A stretch of DNA of 63,703 nt, counting the filler, from Octopus bimaculoides (taxonomy: Eukaryota), in NCBI RefSeq assembly GCF_001194135.2. It is 5 parts of 4 records of this genome, joined end to end, with 100 filler letters (N's around TTAATTAATTAA, not from the genome) between each part and the next. Parts side by side here need not be neighbours in the genome. Positions count along the whole stretch, not along the records: positions 1 to 9,683 come from NC_069010.1; 4 more parts are not named here. One strand, given 5' to 3'. Shown piece by piece: positions 1-20,896 of the stretch (positions are counted from its first letter, which is position 1; each line of letters opens with the position of its first letter). The notes under the pieces are model-generated. The model was not told the origin of the DNA. It did not search any database and was given only the letters and a program-made list of their open reading frames with translations. The translations under genes and the position numbers were made by a program.

Positions 1-2
1 CA

Positions 3-490
3 GATGTTGAGTGGAAAGATAGAGACAGTGTGTTGATGTTGAGTGGAAAGATAGACACAGTGTGTGGATGTTGAGTGGAAAGATAGAGACAGTGTGTAGA
101 TTTTGAGTGGAAAGATAGTCACAATGTGTAGATGTTGAGTGGAAAGATAGACACAGTGTGTGGATGGTGGAAAGATAGACACAGTGTGTGGATGTTGAGT
201 GGAAAGATAGAGACAGTGTGTAGATGTTGAGTGGAAAGATAGACACAGTGTGTAGATGTTGAGTGGAAAGATAGAGACAGTGTGTGGATGTTGAGTGGAA
301 AGATTGACACAGTGTGTAGATGTTGAGTGGAAAGATAGAGACAGTGTGTAGATGTTGAATGGAAAGATAGAGACAGTGTGTGGATGTTGAGTGGAAAGAT
401 AGAGACAGTGTGTGGATGTTGAGTGGAAAGATAGAGACAGTGTGTGGATGTTGAGTGGAAAGATAGACAATGTATGGATGTTGTATGGGT
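3..490. repeat. 32-bp minisatellite, about 15 degenerate copies
   Basis: Unit GATGTTGAGTGGAAAGATAGA(G/C)ACAGTGTGT(A/G) starts at 3, 35, 67 and onward; it decays after about 460 and is probably cut by the window start. Confidence 0.95.
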
Positions 491-620
491 AAATGGAAAA
501 AGTGTGTAAATGCTGAGTGAAAGGTTAAATTGATGGATGGATGGATGGTGCAGGCATTGAGTGGATAAAGAAATACAAAATATGTAGATAAATTTTAAAA
601 GAGAGTAACCCTAACCCTAA

Positions 621-665: not shown

Positions 666-2072
666 ATGAATGGAATCGACGTCGCTTACAACAACAAACA
701 CATCATCGGCGTACTTGGCACCGGAGATTTTGCCCGAGCCATTACCAAAAGACTTATAATGTCTGGATACTCTGTGTATATGGGTAGCCGTTGCACTCAA
801 GACCACAAACTTGCTGAAAATGACAAAACACTCGAAGACGCCCATGTCGTGTCCAACCATACCTGTTTGACTCACACCGATATTAGAATATTAATCCTTG
901 CTGTCCCACATCATGCTATCTTTACAATTCTCCAGAACTACAAGGATTTTCTCACCGACAAGATCCTGGTCGATGTCTCCAACCGAACTGAATACGACGA
1001 AGCAGAGTCGCTTGCCGAAATCCTTGCTGATGGATTTCCCGAGGCAGATGTTGTCAAGGCCTTCAATACTCTCTCAGCGTACGCCATTGAAAGTGATTCT
1101 TTTGGTGGGAGTCGACGTGTTCTCATCGCTTCGAATAACAGAACTGCTTCGATGTCAATATCTGAACTTTGTCACGATATGGGATTTTCTACTTTAAACA
1201 TGGGGGGCTTAAGAAATGCCCGAGAGTTGGAGTGTCGGCAGTTGGTTTTGATGTCAGGCTGGGGTGTTCCTACGCTTTTCACGTTTGCTGTTTTCTTCTT
1301 CTGGTTTGCCATCTGTGCCATTGAGTTTGGGATATTTTTCGGTTCCCATCCAGAAATAAAAATTCCACTCGGTAACTTGCCGTTAAGTGCTCTGAACAAG
1401 CCAGTCTGTCTGACGGCCATTACACTTCTTGCTCTCTCTTATCTTCCAGGCTGTCTGGCTTCCTTTCTGCAGATTTGCCGTGGCACCAAATACAAATGCT
1501 TTCCTCATTGCATGGACCGGTGGTTGAAGTCCCGCAAGATGCTTGGACTCTTCGCACTTCTGTTCAGCTGTTGGCATGTCATGATCAGTGCCATTATCCT
1601 CTCCCCAGCCTCAATGCCAGAATGGTACCAACACAGTCACATCCATTTACCAACAAACACCACCAACTTTTCATTCGAACTTTCATCACGGATGAACTGG
1701 ATTGGTGAAACATCTATCAGTGTTGGCCTTCTCGGTCTCATCTCTATGAGCATTCTCGGTCTAACATCAGTGCCTTCAATTTCAGATACTCTAAACTGGC
1801 AGGAATGGCGATTTTTCCAATCCAAGCTTGGCTACATGACCCTATTCTTAATTACGGCCCATGTGCTTGTCATGGCTGTTCCCTTCTGGATCAAGGCGCC
1901 AGCATTCATTGCCATATCCATTCGCTTCTACTGCGTCCTGCTACCGGCTCTAGTATTCCTCATGAAATTTCTACTGTTAATTCCTTGTGTGGATCGCTAC
2001 CTTATGAAAATCCGTTCGGGATGGGAAAGGAGAAAATATCATACACATAACAATGGCTATGTTCACATTTAA
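666..2072 (+). CDS. STEAP: STEAP-family metalloreductase (STEAP2/3/4-like, 468 aa): N-terminal NADPH-binding F420:NADP-oxidoreductase-like domain plus 6-TM ferric-reductase domain; CDS in one exon
   Basis: Rossmann motif IGVLGTGDFA, GSR, DVSN and VVKAFN; TM-domain motifs YLPG, LQxxxGTKYxxFPxxxDxWxxxRKxLG and TSxPSxxxxLNWxEWxFxQSKLG; heme-ligand His304 and His399. All match vertebrate STEAP motifs as recalled; the paralog cannot be assigned. Confidence 0.95.
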   Translation: MNGIDVAYNNKHIIGVLGTGDFARAITKRLIMSGYSVYMGSRCTQDHKLAENDKTLEDAHVVSNHTCLTHTDIRILILAVPHHAIFTILQNYKDFLTDKILVDVSNRTEYDEAESLAEILADGFPEADVVKAFNTLSAYAIESDSFGGSRRVLIASNNRTASMSISELCHDMGFSTLNMGGLRNARELECRQLVLMSGWGVPTLFTFAVFFFWFAICAIEFGIFFGSHPEIKIPLGNLPLSALNKPVCLTAITLLALSYLPGCLASFLQICRGTKYKCFPHCMDRWLKSRKMLGLFALLFSCWHVMISAIILSPASMPEWYQHSHIHLPTNTTNFSFELSSRMNWIGETSISVGLLGLISMSILGLTSVPSISDTLNWQEWRFFQSKLGYMTLFLITAHVLVMAVPFWIKAPAFIAISIRFYCVLLPALVFLMKFLLLIPCVDRYLMKIRSGWERRKYHTHNNGYVHI

Positions 2073-2154
2073 GAAATATGCAAACAAACTGGACACAAAG
2101 GATATGTATGTCTACCTGCCAGTCTTTGCCCTCTATCTGTTTGTCTTTATCTTT

Positions 2155-2347
2155 TATCTTTTACTTGCCTCAGAAATTGGACTGCAGTCATGCTGGGACA
2201 CAGACCTGATGGGTTTAATCAAACAAATCGACCCTGGGACTTATTTTCAATTCTGGTATGATGAACTTCCACACAGCTTCTGTCTACCACATTCACTCAC
2301 AAGGCCTTGGTTGGCCTGGGGTTAAAGTAGAAGGCACTTACCCAAGG
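2155..2347 (-). mobile_element. Degenerate SINE family B copy (tail plus CORE-like part)
   Basis: Similar to the family B tail (ttttacttg..gactgcagtcatgctgg..aatcgaccctgggacttatt) and to the reverse complement of its ccttgggcaagtgt..ctactatagcc..ttgtgagtgga segment. Confidence 0.7.
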
Positions 2348-2700
2348 CAGACGCATGGCTGTGTCATAAGAAGCTTGCTTCCCAACCACATGTGTGGCAC
2401 CTTGGGCAAGTGTATTCTACTATAGCCTCGGGCCAACCAAAGACTTGTGAGTGGATTTGGTAGATGGAAACTGAATCCCGTCATATATATATGTGTGTGT
2501 GTGTGTGTATATGTTTGTTTGTATGTGTTTGTTCCCCTGCCATCACTTGACCACAAATGCTGGTGTGTTTATGTCCCCATAACTTAGGGGTTTGGCAAAA
2601 GAGATCAATAGAATAATTACTAGGTTTGCAAAGAATAAGTTCTGGGGTCGGTTTCTTTGACTAATACCCTTTAAGGTGGTGCTCCAGCTAGACCACTGGT
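2348..2700 (+). mobile_element. SINE family B (tRNA-like head, CORE-like segment, central TA/TG microsatellite, 3' tail)
   Basis: ggctgtgt..aagaagcttgcttcccaaccacat, then accttgggcaagtgt (resembles the CORE-SINE GACCTTGGGCAAGT motif), a microsatellite, and a tail ending ggtggtgctccagc. The B-box region is deleted. Many homologous copies occur in the window. Confidence 0.85.
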
Positions 2701-2769
2701 TTTAATTGATTAATATTAATTTCTACCCTCATTAATAAATTTTATATATATATATATATTTGGCTGTGT

Positions 2770-3102
2770 GCGTGTGTCTTTCCCCTGGACTGGCTCTTGT
2801 GCGGGTGGCACATAAGATGCACCATTTTGAGAGCGTGGCCGTTGCCAGTACCGCCTGACTGGCCTTCGTAGGATTTTCGAGCGAGATCGTTGCCAGTGCC
2901 CCTGGACTGGCTTGTGCGGGTGGCACATAAAAGACACCATTTCGAGCGTGGCCGTTGCCAGTATCGCCTGACTGGCCTTCATGCGGGTGACACGTAAAAG
3001 CACCCACTACACTCTCTGAGTGGTTGGCGTTAGGAAGGGCATCCAGCTGTAGAAACTCTGCCAAATTTAGATTGGAACCTGGTGTTGCCATCCGGTTTTA
3101 TC
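2770..3102 (+). mobile_element. SINE-like family D with an internal tandem duplication of about 110 bp
   Basis: cccctggactggct..gtgcgggtggcacataa..gagcgtggccgttgccagta..ctgactggccttc occurs twice, followed by gttggcgttaggaagggcatccagctgtagaaactctgcc, which is shared with 4763-4890 and 6907-7058. Confidence 0.8.
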
Positions 3103-3803
3103 NNNNNNNNNNNNNNNNNNNNNNNNNNNNNNNNNNNNNNNNNNNNNNNNNNNNNNNNNNNNNNNNNNNNNNNNNNNNNNNNNNNNNNNNNNNNNNNNNN
3201 NNNTATATACAAATTAAAAGGGTAAAGGATTATCAATTTATTAATTAATAAATCAATTAACAATTAACAATTTTTACCAAGCCCATCGGTATGAAAGCAC
3301 CATTATTGGTGGAGAAACTTATTTAAAAGCTCATATATATTTATAAATATAATTAAGGGATCAGCAAATATTTGCTTCACCATATACCGAAGTTCAGAAA
3401 TATATATATATATATACACACGCACACACAATTTGTCGTTTACTGTTCCATTAAGCTGAGATTAATAAAAAAAAAAGTACTCCATCCAATCAGAGATAAA
3501 TATATCATTTAATATATGCAGTTTATAAAATAAAAGCTGGAAATAGTTTCTTGCCATGGAGGTACTGAAACGAGGAAGATTTTTATGGTATGTGTTGTGT
3601 CTCCAAGCAGTCATGAAACTCTGGGCACATGGTTAATTCTATTTGTACCATGTCTCCAGCAGACTAATTTTCAAATAGAAAAAAACGCATTGCTAGAATG
3701 ATACACTGCCAACATTTATATTCATATATATATATATGTATAGAAAAAAAAAAAAATATATATATATACTTTATTTAAAAGCAGCAGAAATATAACAAAA
3801 AAA

Positions 3804-3845
3804 CCGTTACTCTGAGTTTCACGTTCCCGTTCATCGGACAGTTTT
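3804..3845 (-). ncRNA. Minimal type I hammerhead ribozyme motif (repeat family 3)
   Basis: Minus strand: AAAACUGU-CCGAUGA-ACG(GGAA)CGU-GAA-ACUC(A)GAGU-A-ACGGUUUU. 8-bp stem I, U4C core, GNRA-capped stem II, cleavage triplet GUA. Lies in a repeat (about 3765-4093) homologous to 53851-54085. Confidence 0.7.
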
Positions 3846-4200
3846 GTTAGAAATGAAGAAAGGATAACAATGCAATCGAAAGTAATATAAAATTTGAAAT
3901 TTAAAACACATGGATTCGTTTGATTGGTCGTTTCAATTAACAGTCAATGATGTGTAATTCACAGACCAAATAAATTTAATACAGATTCACCCTATTAAAA
4001 AAATATCGAAGAAAACCTTAAATAGAAAAATGGGCTCAAAATGCTACTCTTTTTTTCCACCTTGTTGCACATTTCATGTGCTTACTCCGGTATANNNNNN
4101 NNNNNNNNNNNNNNNNNNNNNNNNNNNNNNNNNNNNNNNNNNNNNNNNNNNNNNNNNNNNNNNNNNNNNNNNNNNNNNNNNNNNNNNNNNNNNNTATAAA

Positions 4201-4244: not shown

Positions 4245-4581
4245 AGTATGACAGACTTTAACAGACTGTTATATATATATGTATATCAATAATAATAATA
4301 ATAAAGATTATTGCAAAGTGCTATGGCATTACCTTTAATTCTTTTTCTATATACACGCCTTTACATAGACCTACACGTGTTTCAACTGCATTGATTAGTA
4401 ATTATTGCAATTACAACCCTACTATAAGACTGGTGCAGCTTCTTCAAGGTCTTTACTTAATATTTTTTGATTTAACTGTTTAAAGTTTTGTGTTTATCTA
4501 CTCTACACTGCATGATATAGAGTTGTTTGTTAAGTTAGACGCAAACTATCTTCAATACAAGTTTTGATTGAATGATCCCTT

Positions 4582-4890
4582 ATACTCTTTTACTCTTTTA
4601 CTTGTTTCAGTCATTTGACTGCGGCTATGCTGGGGCACCGCCTTTAGTCGAGTAAATCGACCCCAGAACTTATTCTTTTGTAAGCCTAGTACTTATTCTA
4701 TCGGTCTCTCTTTTGCCGAACCGCTAAGTTACGGGGACGTAAACACACCAGCATCGGTTGTCGTTAGGAAGGGCATCCAGCTGTAGAAACTCTGCCAAAT
4801 TTAGATTGGAGCCTGGTGTAGCCATCCGGTTTCACCAGTCCTCAGTCAAATCGTCCAACCCATGCTAGCATGGAAAGCGGACGTTAAACA
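4582..4890. mobile_element. SINE B tail (-, 4582-4762) fused to a SINE D 3' end (+, 4763-4890)
   Basis: The B tail ends at ccagcatcggttgtc and switches to gttaggaagggcatccagc..catgctagcatggaaagcggacgttaaac. Confidence 0.85.
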
Positions 4891-5626
4891 NNNNNNNNNN
4901 NNNNNNNNNNNNNNNNNNNNNNNNNNNNNNNNNNNNNNNNNNNNNNNNNNNNNNNNNNNNNNNNNNNNNNNNNNNNNNNNNNNNNNNNNNNNNNNNNNNN
5001 NNNNNNNNNNNNNNNNNNNNNNNNNNNNNNNNNNNNNNNNNNNNNNNNNNNNNNNNNNNNNNNNNNNNNNNNNNNNNNNNNNNNNNNNNNNNNNNNNNNN
5101 NNNNNNNNNNNNNNNNNNNNNNNNNNNNNNNNNNNNNNNNNNNNNNNNNNNNNNNNNNNNNNNNNNNNNNNNNNNNNNNNNNNNNNNNNNNNNNNNNNNN
5201 NNNNNNNNNNNNNNNNNNNNNNNNNNNNNNNNNNNNNNNNNNNNNNNNNNNNNNNNNNNNNNNNNNNNNNNNNNNNNNNNNNNNNNNNNNNNNNNNNNNN
5301 NNNNNNNNNNNNNNNNNNNNNNNNNNNNNNNNNNNNNNNNNNNNNNNNNNNNNNNNNNNNNNNNNNNNNNNNNNNNNNNNNNNNNNNNNNNNNNNNNNNN
5401 NNNNNNNNNNNNNNNNNNNNNNNNNNNNNNNNNNNNNNNNNNNNNNNNNNNNNNNNNNNNNNNNNNNNNNNNNNNNNNNNNNNNNNNNNNNNNNNNNNNN
5501 NNNNNNNNNNNNNNNNNNNNNNNNNNNNNNNNNNNNNNNNNNNNNNNNNNNNNNNNNNNNNNNNNNNNNNNNNNNNNNNNNNNNNNNNNNNNNNNNNNNN
5601 NNNNNNNNNNNNNNNNNNNNNNNNNN

Positions 5627-5935
5627 ATTTTGTTTAAAAGAGTTCCAACACTGTCTGTTTTTTATGTTTTATTTATATTCCTGCAGGACCAATGTGGGGT
5701 AAAGAATATGGAATATACAATATATAATATAATATACAATATATAGTATAAAATAAAATAAAATAAAAATGGATGGCACCATGAAAGAAAGTATTGAATG
5801 TAGATGAAATATTGAGTGTTCAATATAAAGGATCAAATATATAAATATAAATATATAAAGGCAACTCGAGTTTCAGGGCTATTTCCCTTCGTCATGGCCG
5901 GTATGACAGACTTTACACGTATATATATAAGAATA
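5627..5935 (-). mobile_element. AT-rich repeat family 1 unit of about 300 nt carrying a hammerhead (retrozyme- or Penelope-pLTR-like)
   Basis: Homologous to 4195-4275, 14690-14955 and 24925-25195 (aaaagagttcca..ctgtc.., atattgagtgttcaatataaagg); flanked by (TA)n and an N gap. Confidence 0.75.
5860..5899 (-). ncRNA. Minimal hammerhead with an 8-nt variant core (family 1)
   Basis: GGC-CAUGACGA-AGGG(AAAUAG)CCCU-GAA-ACUCGAGU-U-GCC; palindromic stem III, cleavage triplet GUU. Confidence 0.75.
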
Positions 5936-6599: not shown

Positions 6600-7250
6600 T
6601 TATCTCTTACTTGTTTCAGTCTTTGGCCATGCTAGAGCACTGCCTTCAAGAAATTTAGTTGAATGAATTGCCCTAAGTACTTATTTCTTGAGTAGGTGAG
6701 AAAACAGATGAAGAGAGGGAAAAAAAAAACCCAGAGAGAGTAACAAATGTGTCTGGATTATTGACTTCCCAACTACATGGTTCCGGGTTCAGTCCCACTG
6801 CATGGTACCTTGGGCAAGTGTCTTCTACTAAAGCTTCAGGCCGACTAAAGCCTTGTAAGTGGATTTGGTAGACAGAAACTGAATGAAACCCATCGTGTAT
6901 ATATATCATCATCATCATCATCATCATTTAACGTCCGCTTTCCATGCTAGCTTGGGTTGGACGATTTGACTGAGGACTGGTGGAACCCGAAGGCTACACC
7001 AGGCTCCAATCTGATTTGGCAGAGTTTCTACAGCTGGATGCCCATCCTAATGCCAACTACTTGTTTCAGTCATTTGACTGTGGCCATGCTGGAGCACCGC
7101 CTTTTAGTTGAGCTAATCGACCCCAGGACTTAATCCTAGTAAGCCTAGTACTTATNNNNNNNNNNGGGGGGGGGGGGACAAACACAGACACATACACACA
7201 CACACACCCAAACACATACATATATACAACGGGATTCTTTCAGTTTCTAC
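6600..7250. mobile_element. Nested SINE cluster: B tail (-), B head/CORE (+, about 6745-6905), D 3' end with (CAT)n tail (-, 6907-7058), B tail (-)
   Basis: Direct similarity to the other B and D copies; the D end sits in the microsatellite centre of a B copy. Confidence 0.8.
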
Positions 7251-20523: not shown

Positions 20524-20896
20524 GTGGAGACGCAATGGCCCAGTGGTTAGGGCAGCGGACTCGCGGTCATAGGATCGCGGTTTCGATTCCCAGACTGGGC
20601 GTTGTGAGTGTTTATTGAGCGAAAACACCCGAGGCTCCGCCAGGGGATGGTGGCGAACCCTGCTGTACTCTTTCTCCACAACTTTCTCTTACTTCCTGTT
20701 TCTGTTGTACCTGTAATTCAAAGGGTCAGCCTTGTCACACTCTGTATCACGCTGAATATCCCCGAGAACTACGTTAAGGGTACACGTGTCTGTGGAGTGC
20801 TCAGCCACTTGCACGTTAATTTCACGAGCAGGCTGTTCCGTTGATCGGATCAACTGGAACCCTCGACGACCTAAGCGACGGAGTGCCAACAACAAC
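20524..20896 (+). mobile_element. Full-length SINE A with 12-bp TSD
   Basis: TSD aatagcacagcc at 20512-20523 and 20897-20908; A and B boxes; (CAA)n tail. Confidence 0.92.

What the first reader, a model, noticed from the sequence alone, without database searches (positions are those of the whole stretch)
5627..5935. Family 1 repeat (about 300 nt) carries a hammerhead with a non-canonical 8-nt core, C-A-UGA-N-GA
Seen: GGC-CAUGACGA-AGGG(AAAUAG)CCCU-GAA-ACUCGAGU-U-GCC. All hammerhead elements are in register except one extra nucleotide between C3 and U4. The same insertion is present in all four family members, so it is not a copy-specific error. The rest of the unit is non-coding and AT-rich and of retrozyme size. 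Established: the canonical core is CUGANGA with a C3-G8 pair, and some natural core variants exist. I cannot say whether this one has been described. Inference: either a tolerated bulge that defines a new hammerhead sub-variant, or a deliberately attenuated ribozyme.
Basis: partly seen in the sequence, partly recalled or inferred. Interest (0 to 1): 0.85.

Follow-up and report, generated by a model that had tools for sequence, protein, structure and literature searches.

The report
Octopus hammerhead-like motif, one extra base
An AT-rich non-coding stretch of Octopus bimaculoides DNA carries, on its minus strand, a hammerhead-ribozyme-like motif with one extra base in the catalytic core; it is most likely a damaged relic of the ribozyme-bearing short retroelements common in cephalopod genomes, not a proven new ribozyme variant.

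Summary
The motif is real and reads exactly as described, but on the minus strand (window 5899->5860): GGC-C-A-UGACGA-AGGG(AAAUAG)CCCU-GAA-ACUCGAGU-U-GCC. It has type I topology, and one A sits between C3 and U4.

It is unlikely to be chance in this piece. A descriptor allowing one insertion anywhere in the core expects about 0.003 hits per piece. No hit of this quality appeared in 30 Mb of simulated sequence.

The family claim could not be checked. This piece, and about 188 kb of cephalopod DNA I could fetch, hold only this one copy. The unit runs into a 736-N assembly gap, and it is absent from the orthologous O. sinensis region.

Comparators support hammerhead ancestry. The same genome has a canonical-core type I hammerhead (CUGAUGA, 6-bp helix I) about 20 nt from the 5' end of a 221-nt element bounded by (TA)n tracts, the same layout as here. 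An Argonauta element has an 8-nt core (CUUGAUGA) and looks like a decayed copy of a canonical one.

Rfam finds neither the candidate nor the canonical control, so that negative result says little. Published natural insertions next to C3 cut activity by orders of magnitude.

Verdict: a hammerhead-derived module of a short retroelement, probably impaired. A functional "sub-variant" remains unproven.

The parts
5860..5899 (-). Whole hammerhead-like motif (type I topology), read 5899->5860: GGC-C-A-UGACGA-AGGG(AAAUAG)CCCU-GAA-ACUCGAGU-U-GCC
   Evidence: Single exact occurrence, with none in 200 shuffles. It is the only hit of the one-insertion descriptor in the piece.
5897..5899 (-). Helix I, 5' strand (GGC). 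It pairs with GCC at 5860-5862. Beyond that lie a 2x2 C/U internal loop and then three A-U pairs.
   Evidence: Read from the sequence. The MFE fold contains these pairs. Predicted pairing probability of helix I in the monomer is only 0.28.
5896..5896 (-). C3 of the core
   Evidence: Register of the motif.
5895..5895 (-). The extra A between C3 and U4. It makes the 5' core 8 nt long (CAUGACGA) instead of 7 (CUGANGA).
   Evidence: The alternative register (A at position 3 plus a bulged C in helix I) is no better.
5889..5894 (-). U4-G5-A6-C7-G8-A9 of the core
5875..5888 (-). Helix II, AGGG/CCCU (4 bp, A10.1-U11.1 at its base), with the 6-nt loop AAAUAG
   Evidence: Pairing probability 1.00.
5872..5874 (-). 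G12-A13-A14 of the core
5864..5871 (-). Helix III, ACUCGAGU. As a monomer it gives only 2 bp plus a UCGA loop. It is a perfect 8-nt palindrome (10 nt as AACUCGAGUU), so two copies can form an intermolecular helix.
   Evidence: the palindrome duplex is -10.7 kcal/mol, and the dimer MFE uses the 10-bp intermolecular helix.
5863..5863 (-). U17. The predicted cleavage site (GUU|G) lies between window 5863 and 5862.
   Evidence: Inference from hammerhead numbering. No cleavage data.
5860..5862 (-). Helix I, 3' strand (GCC)
5900..5919 (-). 20-nt 5' leader of the element (CGUGUAAAGUCUGUCAUACC). Its GUCAU can pair with AUGAC of the core to form a competing hairpin.
   Evidence: probability of the alternative hairpin 0.69.
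5920..5929 (.). (TA)5 tract directly upstream (in RNA sense) of the element; probable insertion-site microsatellite
   Evidence: The same layout is seen in L004 and L010.
5627..5859 (-). AT-rich non-coding body of the element downstream of the ribozyme-like motif; cut off by the assembly gap
   Evidence: The fold is not more stable than shuffles (z = -0.76).
4891..5626 (.). 736-N assembly gap that truncates the element. It could hide the 3' end or further copies.

Best explanation
The motif is the ribozyme module of a short, non-coding, non-autonomous retroelement of Octopus bimaculoides, of the kind described in animals as non-LTR retrozymes or Penelope-like-element derivatives. It is transcribed from the minus strand.

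As designed, such a type I hammerhead has a helix III too short to fold alone. Two copies on a multimeric or neighbouring transcript pair through the palindrome (here ACUCGAGU). Each then cuts after its N-U-H triplet (here GUU|G, between 5863 and 5862), releasing unit-length RNA.

In this copy the core carries one extra A between C3 and U4. Helix I has only three base pairs next to the core, and the base pair of helix II is A-U rather than G-C. I therefore think the ribozyme is catalytically crippled or dead: a relic carried along by the element rather than a selected variant. At this locus it is a solitary insertion with no visible partner.

Shown: the sequence, the register, the non-chance quality, the layout shared with a canonical element in the same genome, and absence from the O. 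sinensis orthologous region. Inferred: transcription, dimer mechanism, cleavage site and loss of activity.
For: - Motif and register.
- Not chance at the scale of this piece.
- Source is O. bimaculoides GCA_001194135.2 chromosome CM046630.1.
- The same genome (L004 20744-20786, minus strand) has a canonical-core type I hammerhead: UUCAGG-CUGAUGA-C-GAG(CAAAGA)CUC-A-GAAAC-AU-GUC|CCUGAA. It lies 22 nt from the 5' end of a 221-nt element bounded by (TA)n. A 5'-truncated second copy ending in (TA)n indicates retroposition.
- The candidate sits 23 nt after a (TA)5 tract.
- A canonical hammerhead in another cephalopod (L011) and an 8-nt-core one in Argonauta (L010) share the helix I sequence ACACUG/CAGU. 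The Argonauta copy has lost distal helix I pairs and has an all-A-U helix II, so it looks like decay of a canonical motif.
- In 188 kb of cephalopod DNA, hammerhead-like hits exceed chance: 2 canonical against 0.12 expected, and 2 with an insertion after C3 against 0.07 expected.
- The element is absent from the orthologous O. sinensis interval, which has different repeat insertions.
- Literature: metazoan type I hammerheads with a short palindromic helix III act as dimers (PMC4209133; PMC6765202). Retrozymes are 170-400-nt, low-GC units (PMC7229834). Natural insertions next to C3 nearly abolish cleavage (PMC3088659).
Against: - I could examine only one copy, so ancestry rests on one 40-nt motif plus architectural analogy. 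There is no sequence homology outside the motif to the canonical octopus element.
- No Rfam hammerhead model matches even at E<=10. However, the canonical control is also missed.
- The unit body is not predicted to be unusually structured, whereas retrozyme circular RNAs are described as highly self-paired.
- No tandem copy and no Penelope-like ORF is visible nearby.
Confidence: 0.55

Rival explanations
1. It is a working hammerhead sub-variant. The extra nucleotide between C3 and U4 bulges out of the uridine turn and is tolerated. Alternatively it is kept because it slows cleavage to a useful rate (attenuation), and the family propagates through self-cleaved, possibly circular, RNA.
For: - Every other core position and all three helices are in register.
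- C3 and G8 are both present.
- The palindromic helix III fits the dimer mechanism.
- A second element with an extra base at the same place exists in Argonauta hians (CUUGAUGA), so the class was seen twice in 188 kb against 0.07 expected by chance.
- Some natural core insertions (U13a, A6a, 2a/2b, an extra base after A9) retain at least some activity (PMC3088659).
Against: - There is no activity, expression or conservation evidence of any kind.
- The nearest documented insertions (2a/2b beside C3) reduce the rate about 425-fold in 4 M LiCl and need about 300 mM Mg2+. A6a is also poorly active.
- Helix I is weak (pairing probability 0.28) and a competing hairpin is favoured (0.69).
- The Argonauta case looks like decay of a canonical motif.
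- Canonical cores exist in the same genome.
- A shared insertion within one repeat family is a single inherited event.
Confidence: 0.15
2. It is a chance resemblance. An AT-rich repeat happens to contain UGANGA, GAAA and a few short complementary runs, and no hammerhead ever existed here.
For: - The relaxed C-N-UGANGA descriptor gives about 0.07 hits per Mb-strand, which is a few hundred in a genome of the size I assume for this octopus (about 2-3 Gb, from memory, not measured here).
- The finding was selected by a reader looking for such motifs.
- A different hammerhead look-alike (core CCGAUGA) in this same window sits inside the inverted repeat of a foldback element. It is shared by three copies in two species, yet is explicable by chance (0.15 expected per 188 kb).
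- No Rfam match.
- The fold is no more stable than shuffles (z = -0.04).
Against: - With the observed quality (4-bp G/C-rich helix II, perfect 8-nt palindrome) no hit occurred in 30 Mb of simulated sequence.
- The motif lies at the same distance from a (TA)n-bounded 5' end as the bona fide hammerhead elements in L004 and L010.
- The GC-rich motif is an island in 24%-GC sequence.
Confidence: 0.25

Closest known systems
Type I hammerheads of animal non-LTR retrozymes (Cervera & de la Pena 2020, PMC7229834), including the Schistosoma SINE-like Sm-alpha elements
   Same: Type I topology. Short palindromic helix III implying action as a dimer. Host unit of a few hundred nt, non-coding and low GC. 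Located in an invertebrate (mollusc) genome. A-rich 6-nt loop 2.
   Different: 8-nt 5' core (extra A after C3). A-U instead of G-C at 10.1-11.1. Helix I of 3 bp instead of about 6. GUU instead of the usual GUC. No tandem array visible, though the unit abuts an assembly gap. No evidence of circular RNA.
Minimal hammerheads of Penelope-like elements (Cervera & de la Pena 2014, PMC4209133; Lunse et al. 2017, not readable here)
   Same: Palindromic positions 15.2-16.2 and loop 3. Very low expected monomer activity. Next to a (TA)n tract, the preferred target reported for some Penelope-like elements (PMC8557442).
   Different: No Penelope-like ORF or pseudo-LTR nearby. No extra nucleotide between A9 and 10.1. 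No G10.1-C11.1 pair. The published core exceptions are the U3-A8 covariation and helix bulges, not an insertion after C3.
Saltern hammerhead variants HHmeta/HHphage with insertions 2a/2b (Perreault et al. 2011, PMC3088659)
   Same: Natural hammerheads with an insertion in the core immediately next to C3. This is the precedent that this region can carry extra bases.
   Different: In those variants the insertion is on the 5' side of C3 (between stem I and C3), is two nucleotides long, and comes from halophile viruses. Here it is one A on the 3' side of C3, inside the C3-U4-G5-A6 turn. The saltern variants were shown to be strongly impaired.
Canonical-core hammerhead element of the same genome
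   Same: Same species. Same layout: (TA)n, about 20-nt leader, type I hammerhead, then a non-coding body. Same helix II plan: 3 G/C pairs, a 6-nt A-rich loop, one flanking base on each side. Palindromic helix III.
   Different: That element has the canonical CUGAUGA core, a 6-bp helix I and a GUC triplet. It has no detectable sequence similarity outside the motif, and a different GC content and length (221 nt).

Membership tests
Hammerhead ribozyme (type I) | 5' core strand C3-U4-G5-A6-N7-G8-A9 (7 nt) | tested here: not met
   The sequence is C-A-U-G-A-C-G-A, 8 nt, with one extra A at window 5895. All seven canonical residues are present in order.
Hammerhead ribozyme (type I) | 3' core G12-A13-A14, the A15.1-U16.1 pair, and H17 not G | tested here: met
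   GAA at 5874-5872, A15.1 at 5871, U16.1 at 5864, U17 at 5863.
Hammerhead ribozyme (type I) | Three helices around the core, with helix I open-ended | tested here: met
   Helix I GGC/GCC (3 bp). Helix II AGGG/CCCU (4 bp). Helix III AC/GU as a monomer, or 8 bp as a dimer. Helices I and III are weak.
Hammerhead ribozyme (type I) | Match to a curated covariance model (Rfam hammerhead families) | tested here: inconclusive
   No hammerhead hit at E<=10 on 9.7 kb or on 201 nt. A canonical-core octopus hammerhead used as a control is also not detected.
Hammerhead ribozyme (type I) | [quoted passage not shown] | not testable with these tools
   No experiment or RNA-end data available.
Animal non-LTR retrozyme | Head-to-tail tandem repeats of a 170-400-bp unit, each with a type I hammerhead | tested here: inconclusive
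   Only one motif and no tandem unit in the assembled sequence. The unit runs into a 736-N gap.
Animal non-LTR retrozyme | Low-GC, non-coding unit that folds into a highly self-paired RNA | tested here: inconclusive
   Low GC and non-coding: met. Self-pairing is not above shuffles (z = -0.76), but the unit is truncated.
Animal non-LTR retrozyme | Expression as small circular RNA | not testable with these tools
   No transcriptome access.
Penelope-like element hammerhead (pseudo-LTR) | Location in a pseudo-LTR flanking an ORF with reverse transcriptase and GIY-YIG endonuclease | tested here: not met
   No such ORF in the window or in L001. The only gene is a STEAP4-like metalloreductase.
Penelope-like element hammerhead (pseudo-LTR) | Palindromic 15.2-16.2 and loop 3; an extra nucleotide between A9 and 10.1; a G10.1-C11.1 pair | tested here: not met
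   The palindrome is present. There is no extra nucleotide after A9 if A-U is counted as 10.1-11.1, and no G-C at 10.1-11.1. The criteria come from PMC4209133.

The most novel reading that the evidence does not exclude
A hammerhead core with one extra nucleotide between C3 and U4 (C-N-UGANGA) is a tolerated natural variant. It recurs in short retroelements of octopods: CAUGACGA in Octopus bimaculoides and CUUGAUGA in Argonauta hians. It cleaves as a dimer, perhaps at a deliberately low rate. No insertion at this position appears among the natural core variants in the papers I could read.
Probability: 0.12. Interest if true: 0.6.

Novelty: new member of a known kind. Interest (0 to 1): 0.3.

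Why it matters
If the reading as a relic is right, the value is modest. It documents that octopus genomes carry short hammerhead-bearing retroelements, both canonical and decayed. None of the papers I could search describes these for cephalopods, and Rfam models miss them.

If the extra base were tolerated, it would extend the known sequence space of the best-studied small ribozyme at a position (the C3-U4 step of the uridine turn) thought to be intolerant. Descriptor-based genome scans that demand CUGANGA would then under-count hammerheads.

Tried and rejected
1. Other copies in the piece and in the 21-kb record around it: none.
2. Degenerate motif scans of metagenome contigs (1 hit), prokaryote genomes (4 hits) and viral contigs (0 hits). 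The metagenome hit and the one prokaryote hit I read lie in GC-rich bacterial sequence without the rest of the motif, and the number of hits is about what chance predicts, so I treat all as chance.
3. Fishing for other copies through spurious ORFs. Exact look-ups of the two ORFs across the motif found nothing. One homology search with a chimeric six-frame translation of the unit also found nothing.
4. A last homology search with a transposon ORF from L004, meant to sample more O. bimaculoides DNA, returned nothing.
5. The orthologous locus in O. sinensis does not contain the element, so no orthologue comparison was possible.
6. Alternative registers (A at position 3 with a bulged C in helix I; shifted helix III) are no better than the insertion reading.
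7. The idea that the extra A exists to stabilise an inactive hairpin (GUCAU/AUGAC) was rejected. The competing hairpin is predicted equally with and without the A (0.69 against 0.71).
8. Inverted repeats around the motif, as in a foldback or MITE-like element: none. No tRNA-like head either.
9. A MAFFT alignment of the four cephalopod hammerheads was not in structural register, so I built no covariance model.
10. Lunse et al. 2017 (PMC5785218) and the supplements of PMC8557442 are not held. Text searches for the core string and for 'insertion between C3 and U4' found no description.

Full report
**What is there**

Window 5400-5626 is a run of N. Real sequence resumes at 5627; the gap spans 4891-5626, 736 N.

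In hammerhead numbering it reads as follows.

| Element | Sequence | Window position |
|---|---|---|
| Helix I, 5' strand | GGC | 5899-5897 |
| C3 | C | 5896 |
| Extra base | A | 5895 |
| U4 to A9 | UGACGA | 5894-5889 |
| Helix II with loop | AGGG(AAAUAG)CCCU | 5888-5875 |
| G12-A14 | GAA | 5874-5872 |
| Helix III | ACUCGAGU | 5871-5864 |
| U17 | U | 5863 |
| Helix I, 3' strand | GCC | 5862-5860 |

The predicted cleavage site is therefore between 5863 and 5862. I found no register that removes the extra base: the alternative is A at position 3 plus a bulged C in helix I, which is no better.

The surroundings are AT-rich (GC 0.24) and non-coding (ORFs of 55 aa or less).

**More than chance?**

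- A descriptor that allows one inserted base anywhere in CUGANGA, with helix I of at least 3 bp, helix II of at least 4 bp and helix III of at least 2 bp, finds only this site in the piece. It expects 0.003 hits per 8.7 kb on both strands.
- For the exact class C-N-UGANGA the relaxed rate is 0.07 per Mb-strand. With helix II of at least 4 bp and a perfect 8-nt palindrome there was no hit in 30 Mb.
- For this piece, then, it is not chance. Taking the genome as roughly 2-3 Gb (my recollection, not measured here), a few hundred relaxed hits are expected genome-wide, and the finding was picked by eye. I keep chance as a rival at 0.25.

**Where it comes from**

The intronless STEAP4-like gene at 666-2072 places the window in Octopus bimaculoides GCA_001194135.2, chromosome CM046630.1 (homologues). 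The window is the stretch between two gaps of that record.

**The family claim**

I could not test it.
- There is one copy in the piece and in the 21-kb record.
- There is none in a second O. bimaculoides locus, two O. sinensis loci, four Argonauta hians loci and one unnamed cephalopod contig, 188 kb in all.
- Three collection scans gave only hits that I attribute to chance, judged from the two I read and from their number.
- Two attempts to reach further copies through ORF translations failed, and so did a last protein search.
- The orthologous intergenic interval of O. sinensis has been remodelled by other insertions and lacks the element. The insertion is therefore lineage-specific or was lost there.
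- The left 'boundary' 5627 is only the gap edge.

**What the comparators show**

While sampling cephalopod DNA I found three informative motifs.

- *L004 20744-20786, minus strand, O. bimaculoides.* UUCAGG-CUGAUGA-C-GAG(CAAAGA)CUC-A-GAAAC-AU-GUC|CCUGAA. This is a canonical core with a 6-bp helix I and a palindromic helix III. It lies 22 nt from the 5' end of a 221-nt element bounded by (TA)n tracts. A second, 5'-truncated copy (89.5% over the 3' 105 nt, ending in (TA)n) lies at L001 4043-4147, the signature of retroposition.
- *L011 16376-16420.* ACACUG-CUGAUGA-GACUU(AAUA)AGGUU-GAA-ACAGCUGU-C|CAGUGU. Also canonical, and it follows tRNA-like A and B boxes. I recall the Schistosoma SINE-like hammerhead elements having this layout.
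- *L010 1410-1453, A. hians.* ACACUG-CUUGAUGA-UUUAU(UCAC)AUAAA-GAA-ACCGGU-C|CAGU. This has an 8-nt core with the extra base at the same place, in a ~230-nt element between (CT)n and (TA)n. It shares helix I with the canonical L011 motif, but it has lost the distal pairs and has an all-A-U helix II. I read it as a decayed copy.

The candidate has the same layout: (TA)5 at 5920-5929, a 20-nt leader, then the motif. Across the 188 kb, hammerhead-like hits exceed chance, with 2 canonical against 0.12 expected and 2 with an insertion after C3 against 0.07.

Together this makes hammerhead ancestry the best reading. It also shows that cephalopod genomes hold many such elements in various states of decay.

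**A caution from the same window**

At 3802-3843 (minus strand) lies AACUGU-CCGAUGA-ACG(GGAA)CGU-GAAA-CUCAGAGU-A-ACGGUU. This is a look-alike with U4->C, shared by two O. sinensis copies. It sits at the inner end of a ~45-nt terminal inverted repeat of a foldback-type repeat. Its substitution class is expected 0.15 times per 188 kb by chance. So 'all family members share it' is one inherited event, not independent evidence.

**Rfam**

No hammerhead model matches the candidate at E<=10, on 9.7 kb or on 201 nt. The canonical L004 motif is missed as well, so the negative result carries little weight.

**Is the variant likely to work?**

Structure prediction:
- As a monomer, helix II is solid (probability 1.00) but helix I is weak (0.28).
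- A competing hairpin, GUCAU/AUGAC, is favoured (0.69). It forms equally without the extra A (0.71), so the A is not explained by it.
- The palindrome gives a -10.7 kcal/mol duplex, and the dimer MFE uses a 10-bp intermolecular helix. This fits the dimer mechanism described for animal hammerheads (PMC4209133; PMC6765202).

Published natural core variants that I could read (PMC3088659; PMC4209133; the extra base after A9 from a title in a reference list):
- the U3-A8 covariation;
- A6C;
- an insertion after A6 (poorly active);
- U13a;
- U15.1-A16.1;
- an extra base after A9;
- two-nucleotide insertions 2a/2b next to C3 in saltern viruses. These cleave about 425-fold slower than consensus in 4 M LiCl and need about 300 mM Mg2+ to reach 0.13 per min, whereas removing the insertion restores near-complete cleavage.

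None of these is between C3 and U4, and text searches found no description of such a core. Lunse et al. 2017 could not be read.

On this basis I expect the extra A to be strongly deleterious. Helix I of only 3 bp, the A-U pair at 10.1-11.1 and the GUU triplet make this worse.

**Conclusion**

| Reading | Confidence |
|---|---|
| Hammerhead-derived module of a short non-autonomous retroelement (retrozyme or Penelope-dependent type), probably inactive; a solitary insertion next to an assembly gap | 0.55 |
| Active or attenuated sub-variant | 0.15 |
| Chance resemblance | 0.25 |

The remainder is unassigned. It does not meet the strict definition of a hammerhead core, so I do not file it as a bona fide ribozyme. 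It resembles one, and probably descends from one.

Novelty: a new, probably decayed, member of a known kind. Interest is low to moderate. The genome-wide family alignment and a simple cleavage assay would settle the question.

Noticed in passing
L004 20582-20802 (minus strand; O. bimaculoides CM046629.1), hammerhead at 20744-20786: A 221-nt element between two (TA)n tracts, directly after the (TA)n tail of a SINE-like repeat. It carries a canonical-core type I hammerhead (CUGAUGA, 6-bp helix I, palindromic ACAUGU helix III, GUC site). Rfam does not detect it.
   Followed up: yes
L001 4043-4147 (outside the window, same chromosome): A 5'-truncated copy (3' 105 nt, 89.5% identity) of the L004 hammerhead element, ending in (TA)n and lacking the ribozyme part. 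This indicates retroposition with 5' truncation.
   Followed up: partly
L010 1397-1627 (Argonauta hians BAAFZT010000009.1), motif at 1410-1453: A ~230-nt element between (CT)n and (TA)n with a hammerhead-like motif whose core is also 8 nt (CUUGAUGA). It shares helix I (ACACUG/CAGU) with the canonical hammerhead in L011.
   Followed up: partly
L011 16290-16420 (ENA ERZ21867824 ctg105184l, unnamed cephalopod): A canonical type I hammerhead (ACACUG-CUGAUGA-...-ACAGCUGU-C|CAGUGU) immediately downstream of tRNA-like A and B box sequences, a SINE-like layout.
   Followed up: partly
window 3802-3843 (minus strand); also L003 1168-1197 (+) and 1535-1564 (-): A second hammerhead look-alike with core CCGAUGA (U4->C), conserved in three copies in two Octopus species. 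It lies at the inner end of a ~45-nt terminal inverted repeat of a foldback/MITE-like repeat, and is probably chance.
   Followed up: partly
window 2-523: A 32-nt tandem repeat (16.5 copies, consensus AGATGTTGAGTGGAAAGATAGAGACAGTGTGT, strong G-over-C skew) just upstream of the STEAP4-like gene. The O. sinensis orthologue has a longer array of the same repeat.
   Followed up: no
window 666-2072 (+): An intronless 468-aa STEAP4-like metalloreductase gene (Pfam F420_oxidored and Ferric_reduct). It is 91% identical to O. sinensis and 75% to Argonauta hians, and is one of several paralogues in octopods.
   Followed up: partly
window 2144-3100, 4575-4889, 6765-7250: Several copies, in both orientations, of SINE-like repeats that are also abundant in O. 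sinensis. One type ends in a (TA)n-like tail.
   Followed up: no
window 3103-3203, 4095-4194, 4891-5626, 7156-7165: Four assembly gaps inside the piece. Two of them (4891-5626, and L001 3238-4011 outside the window) lie next to hammerhead-element copies.
   Followed up: no
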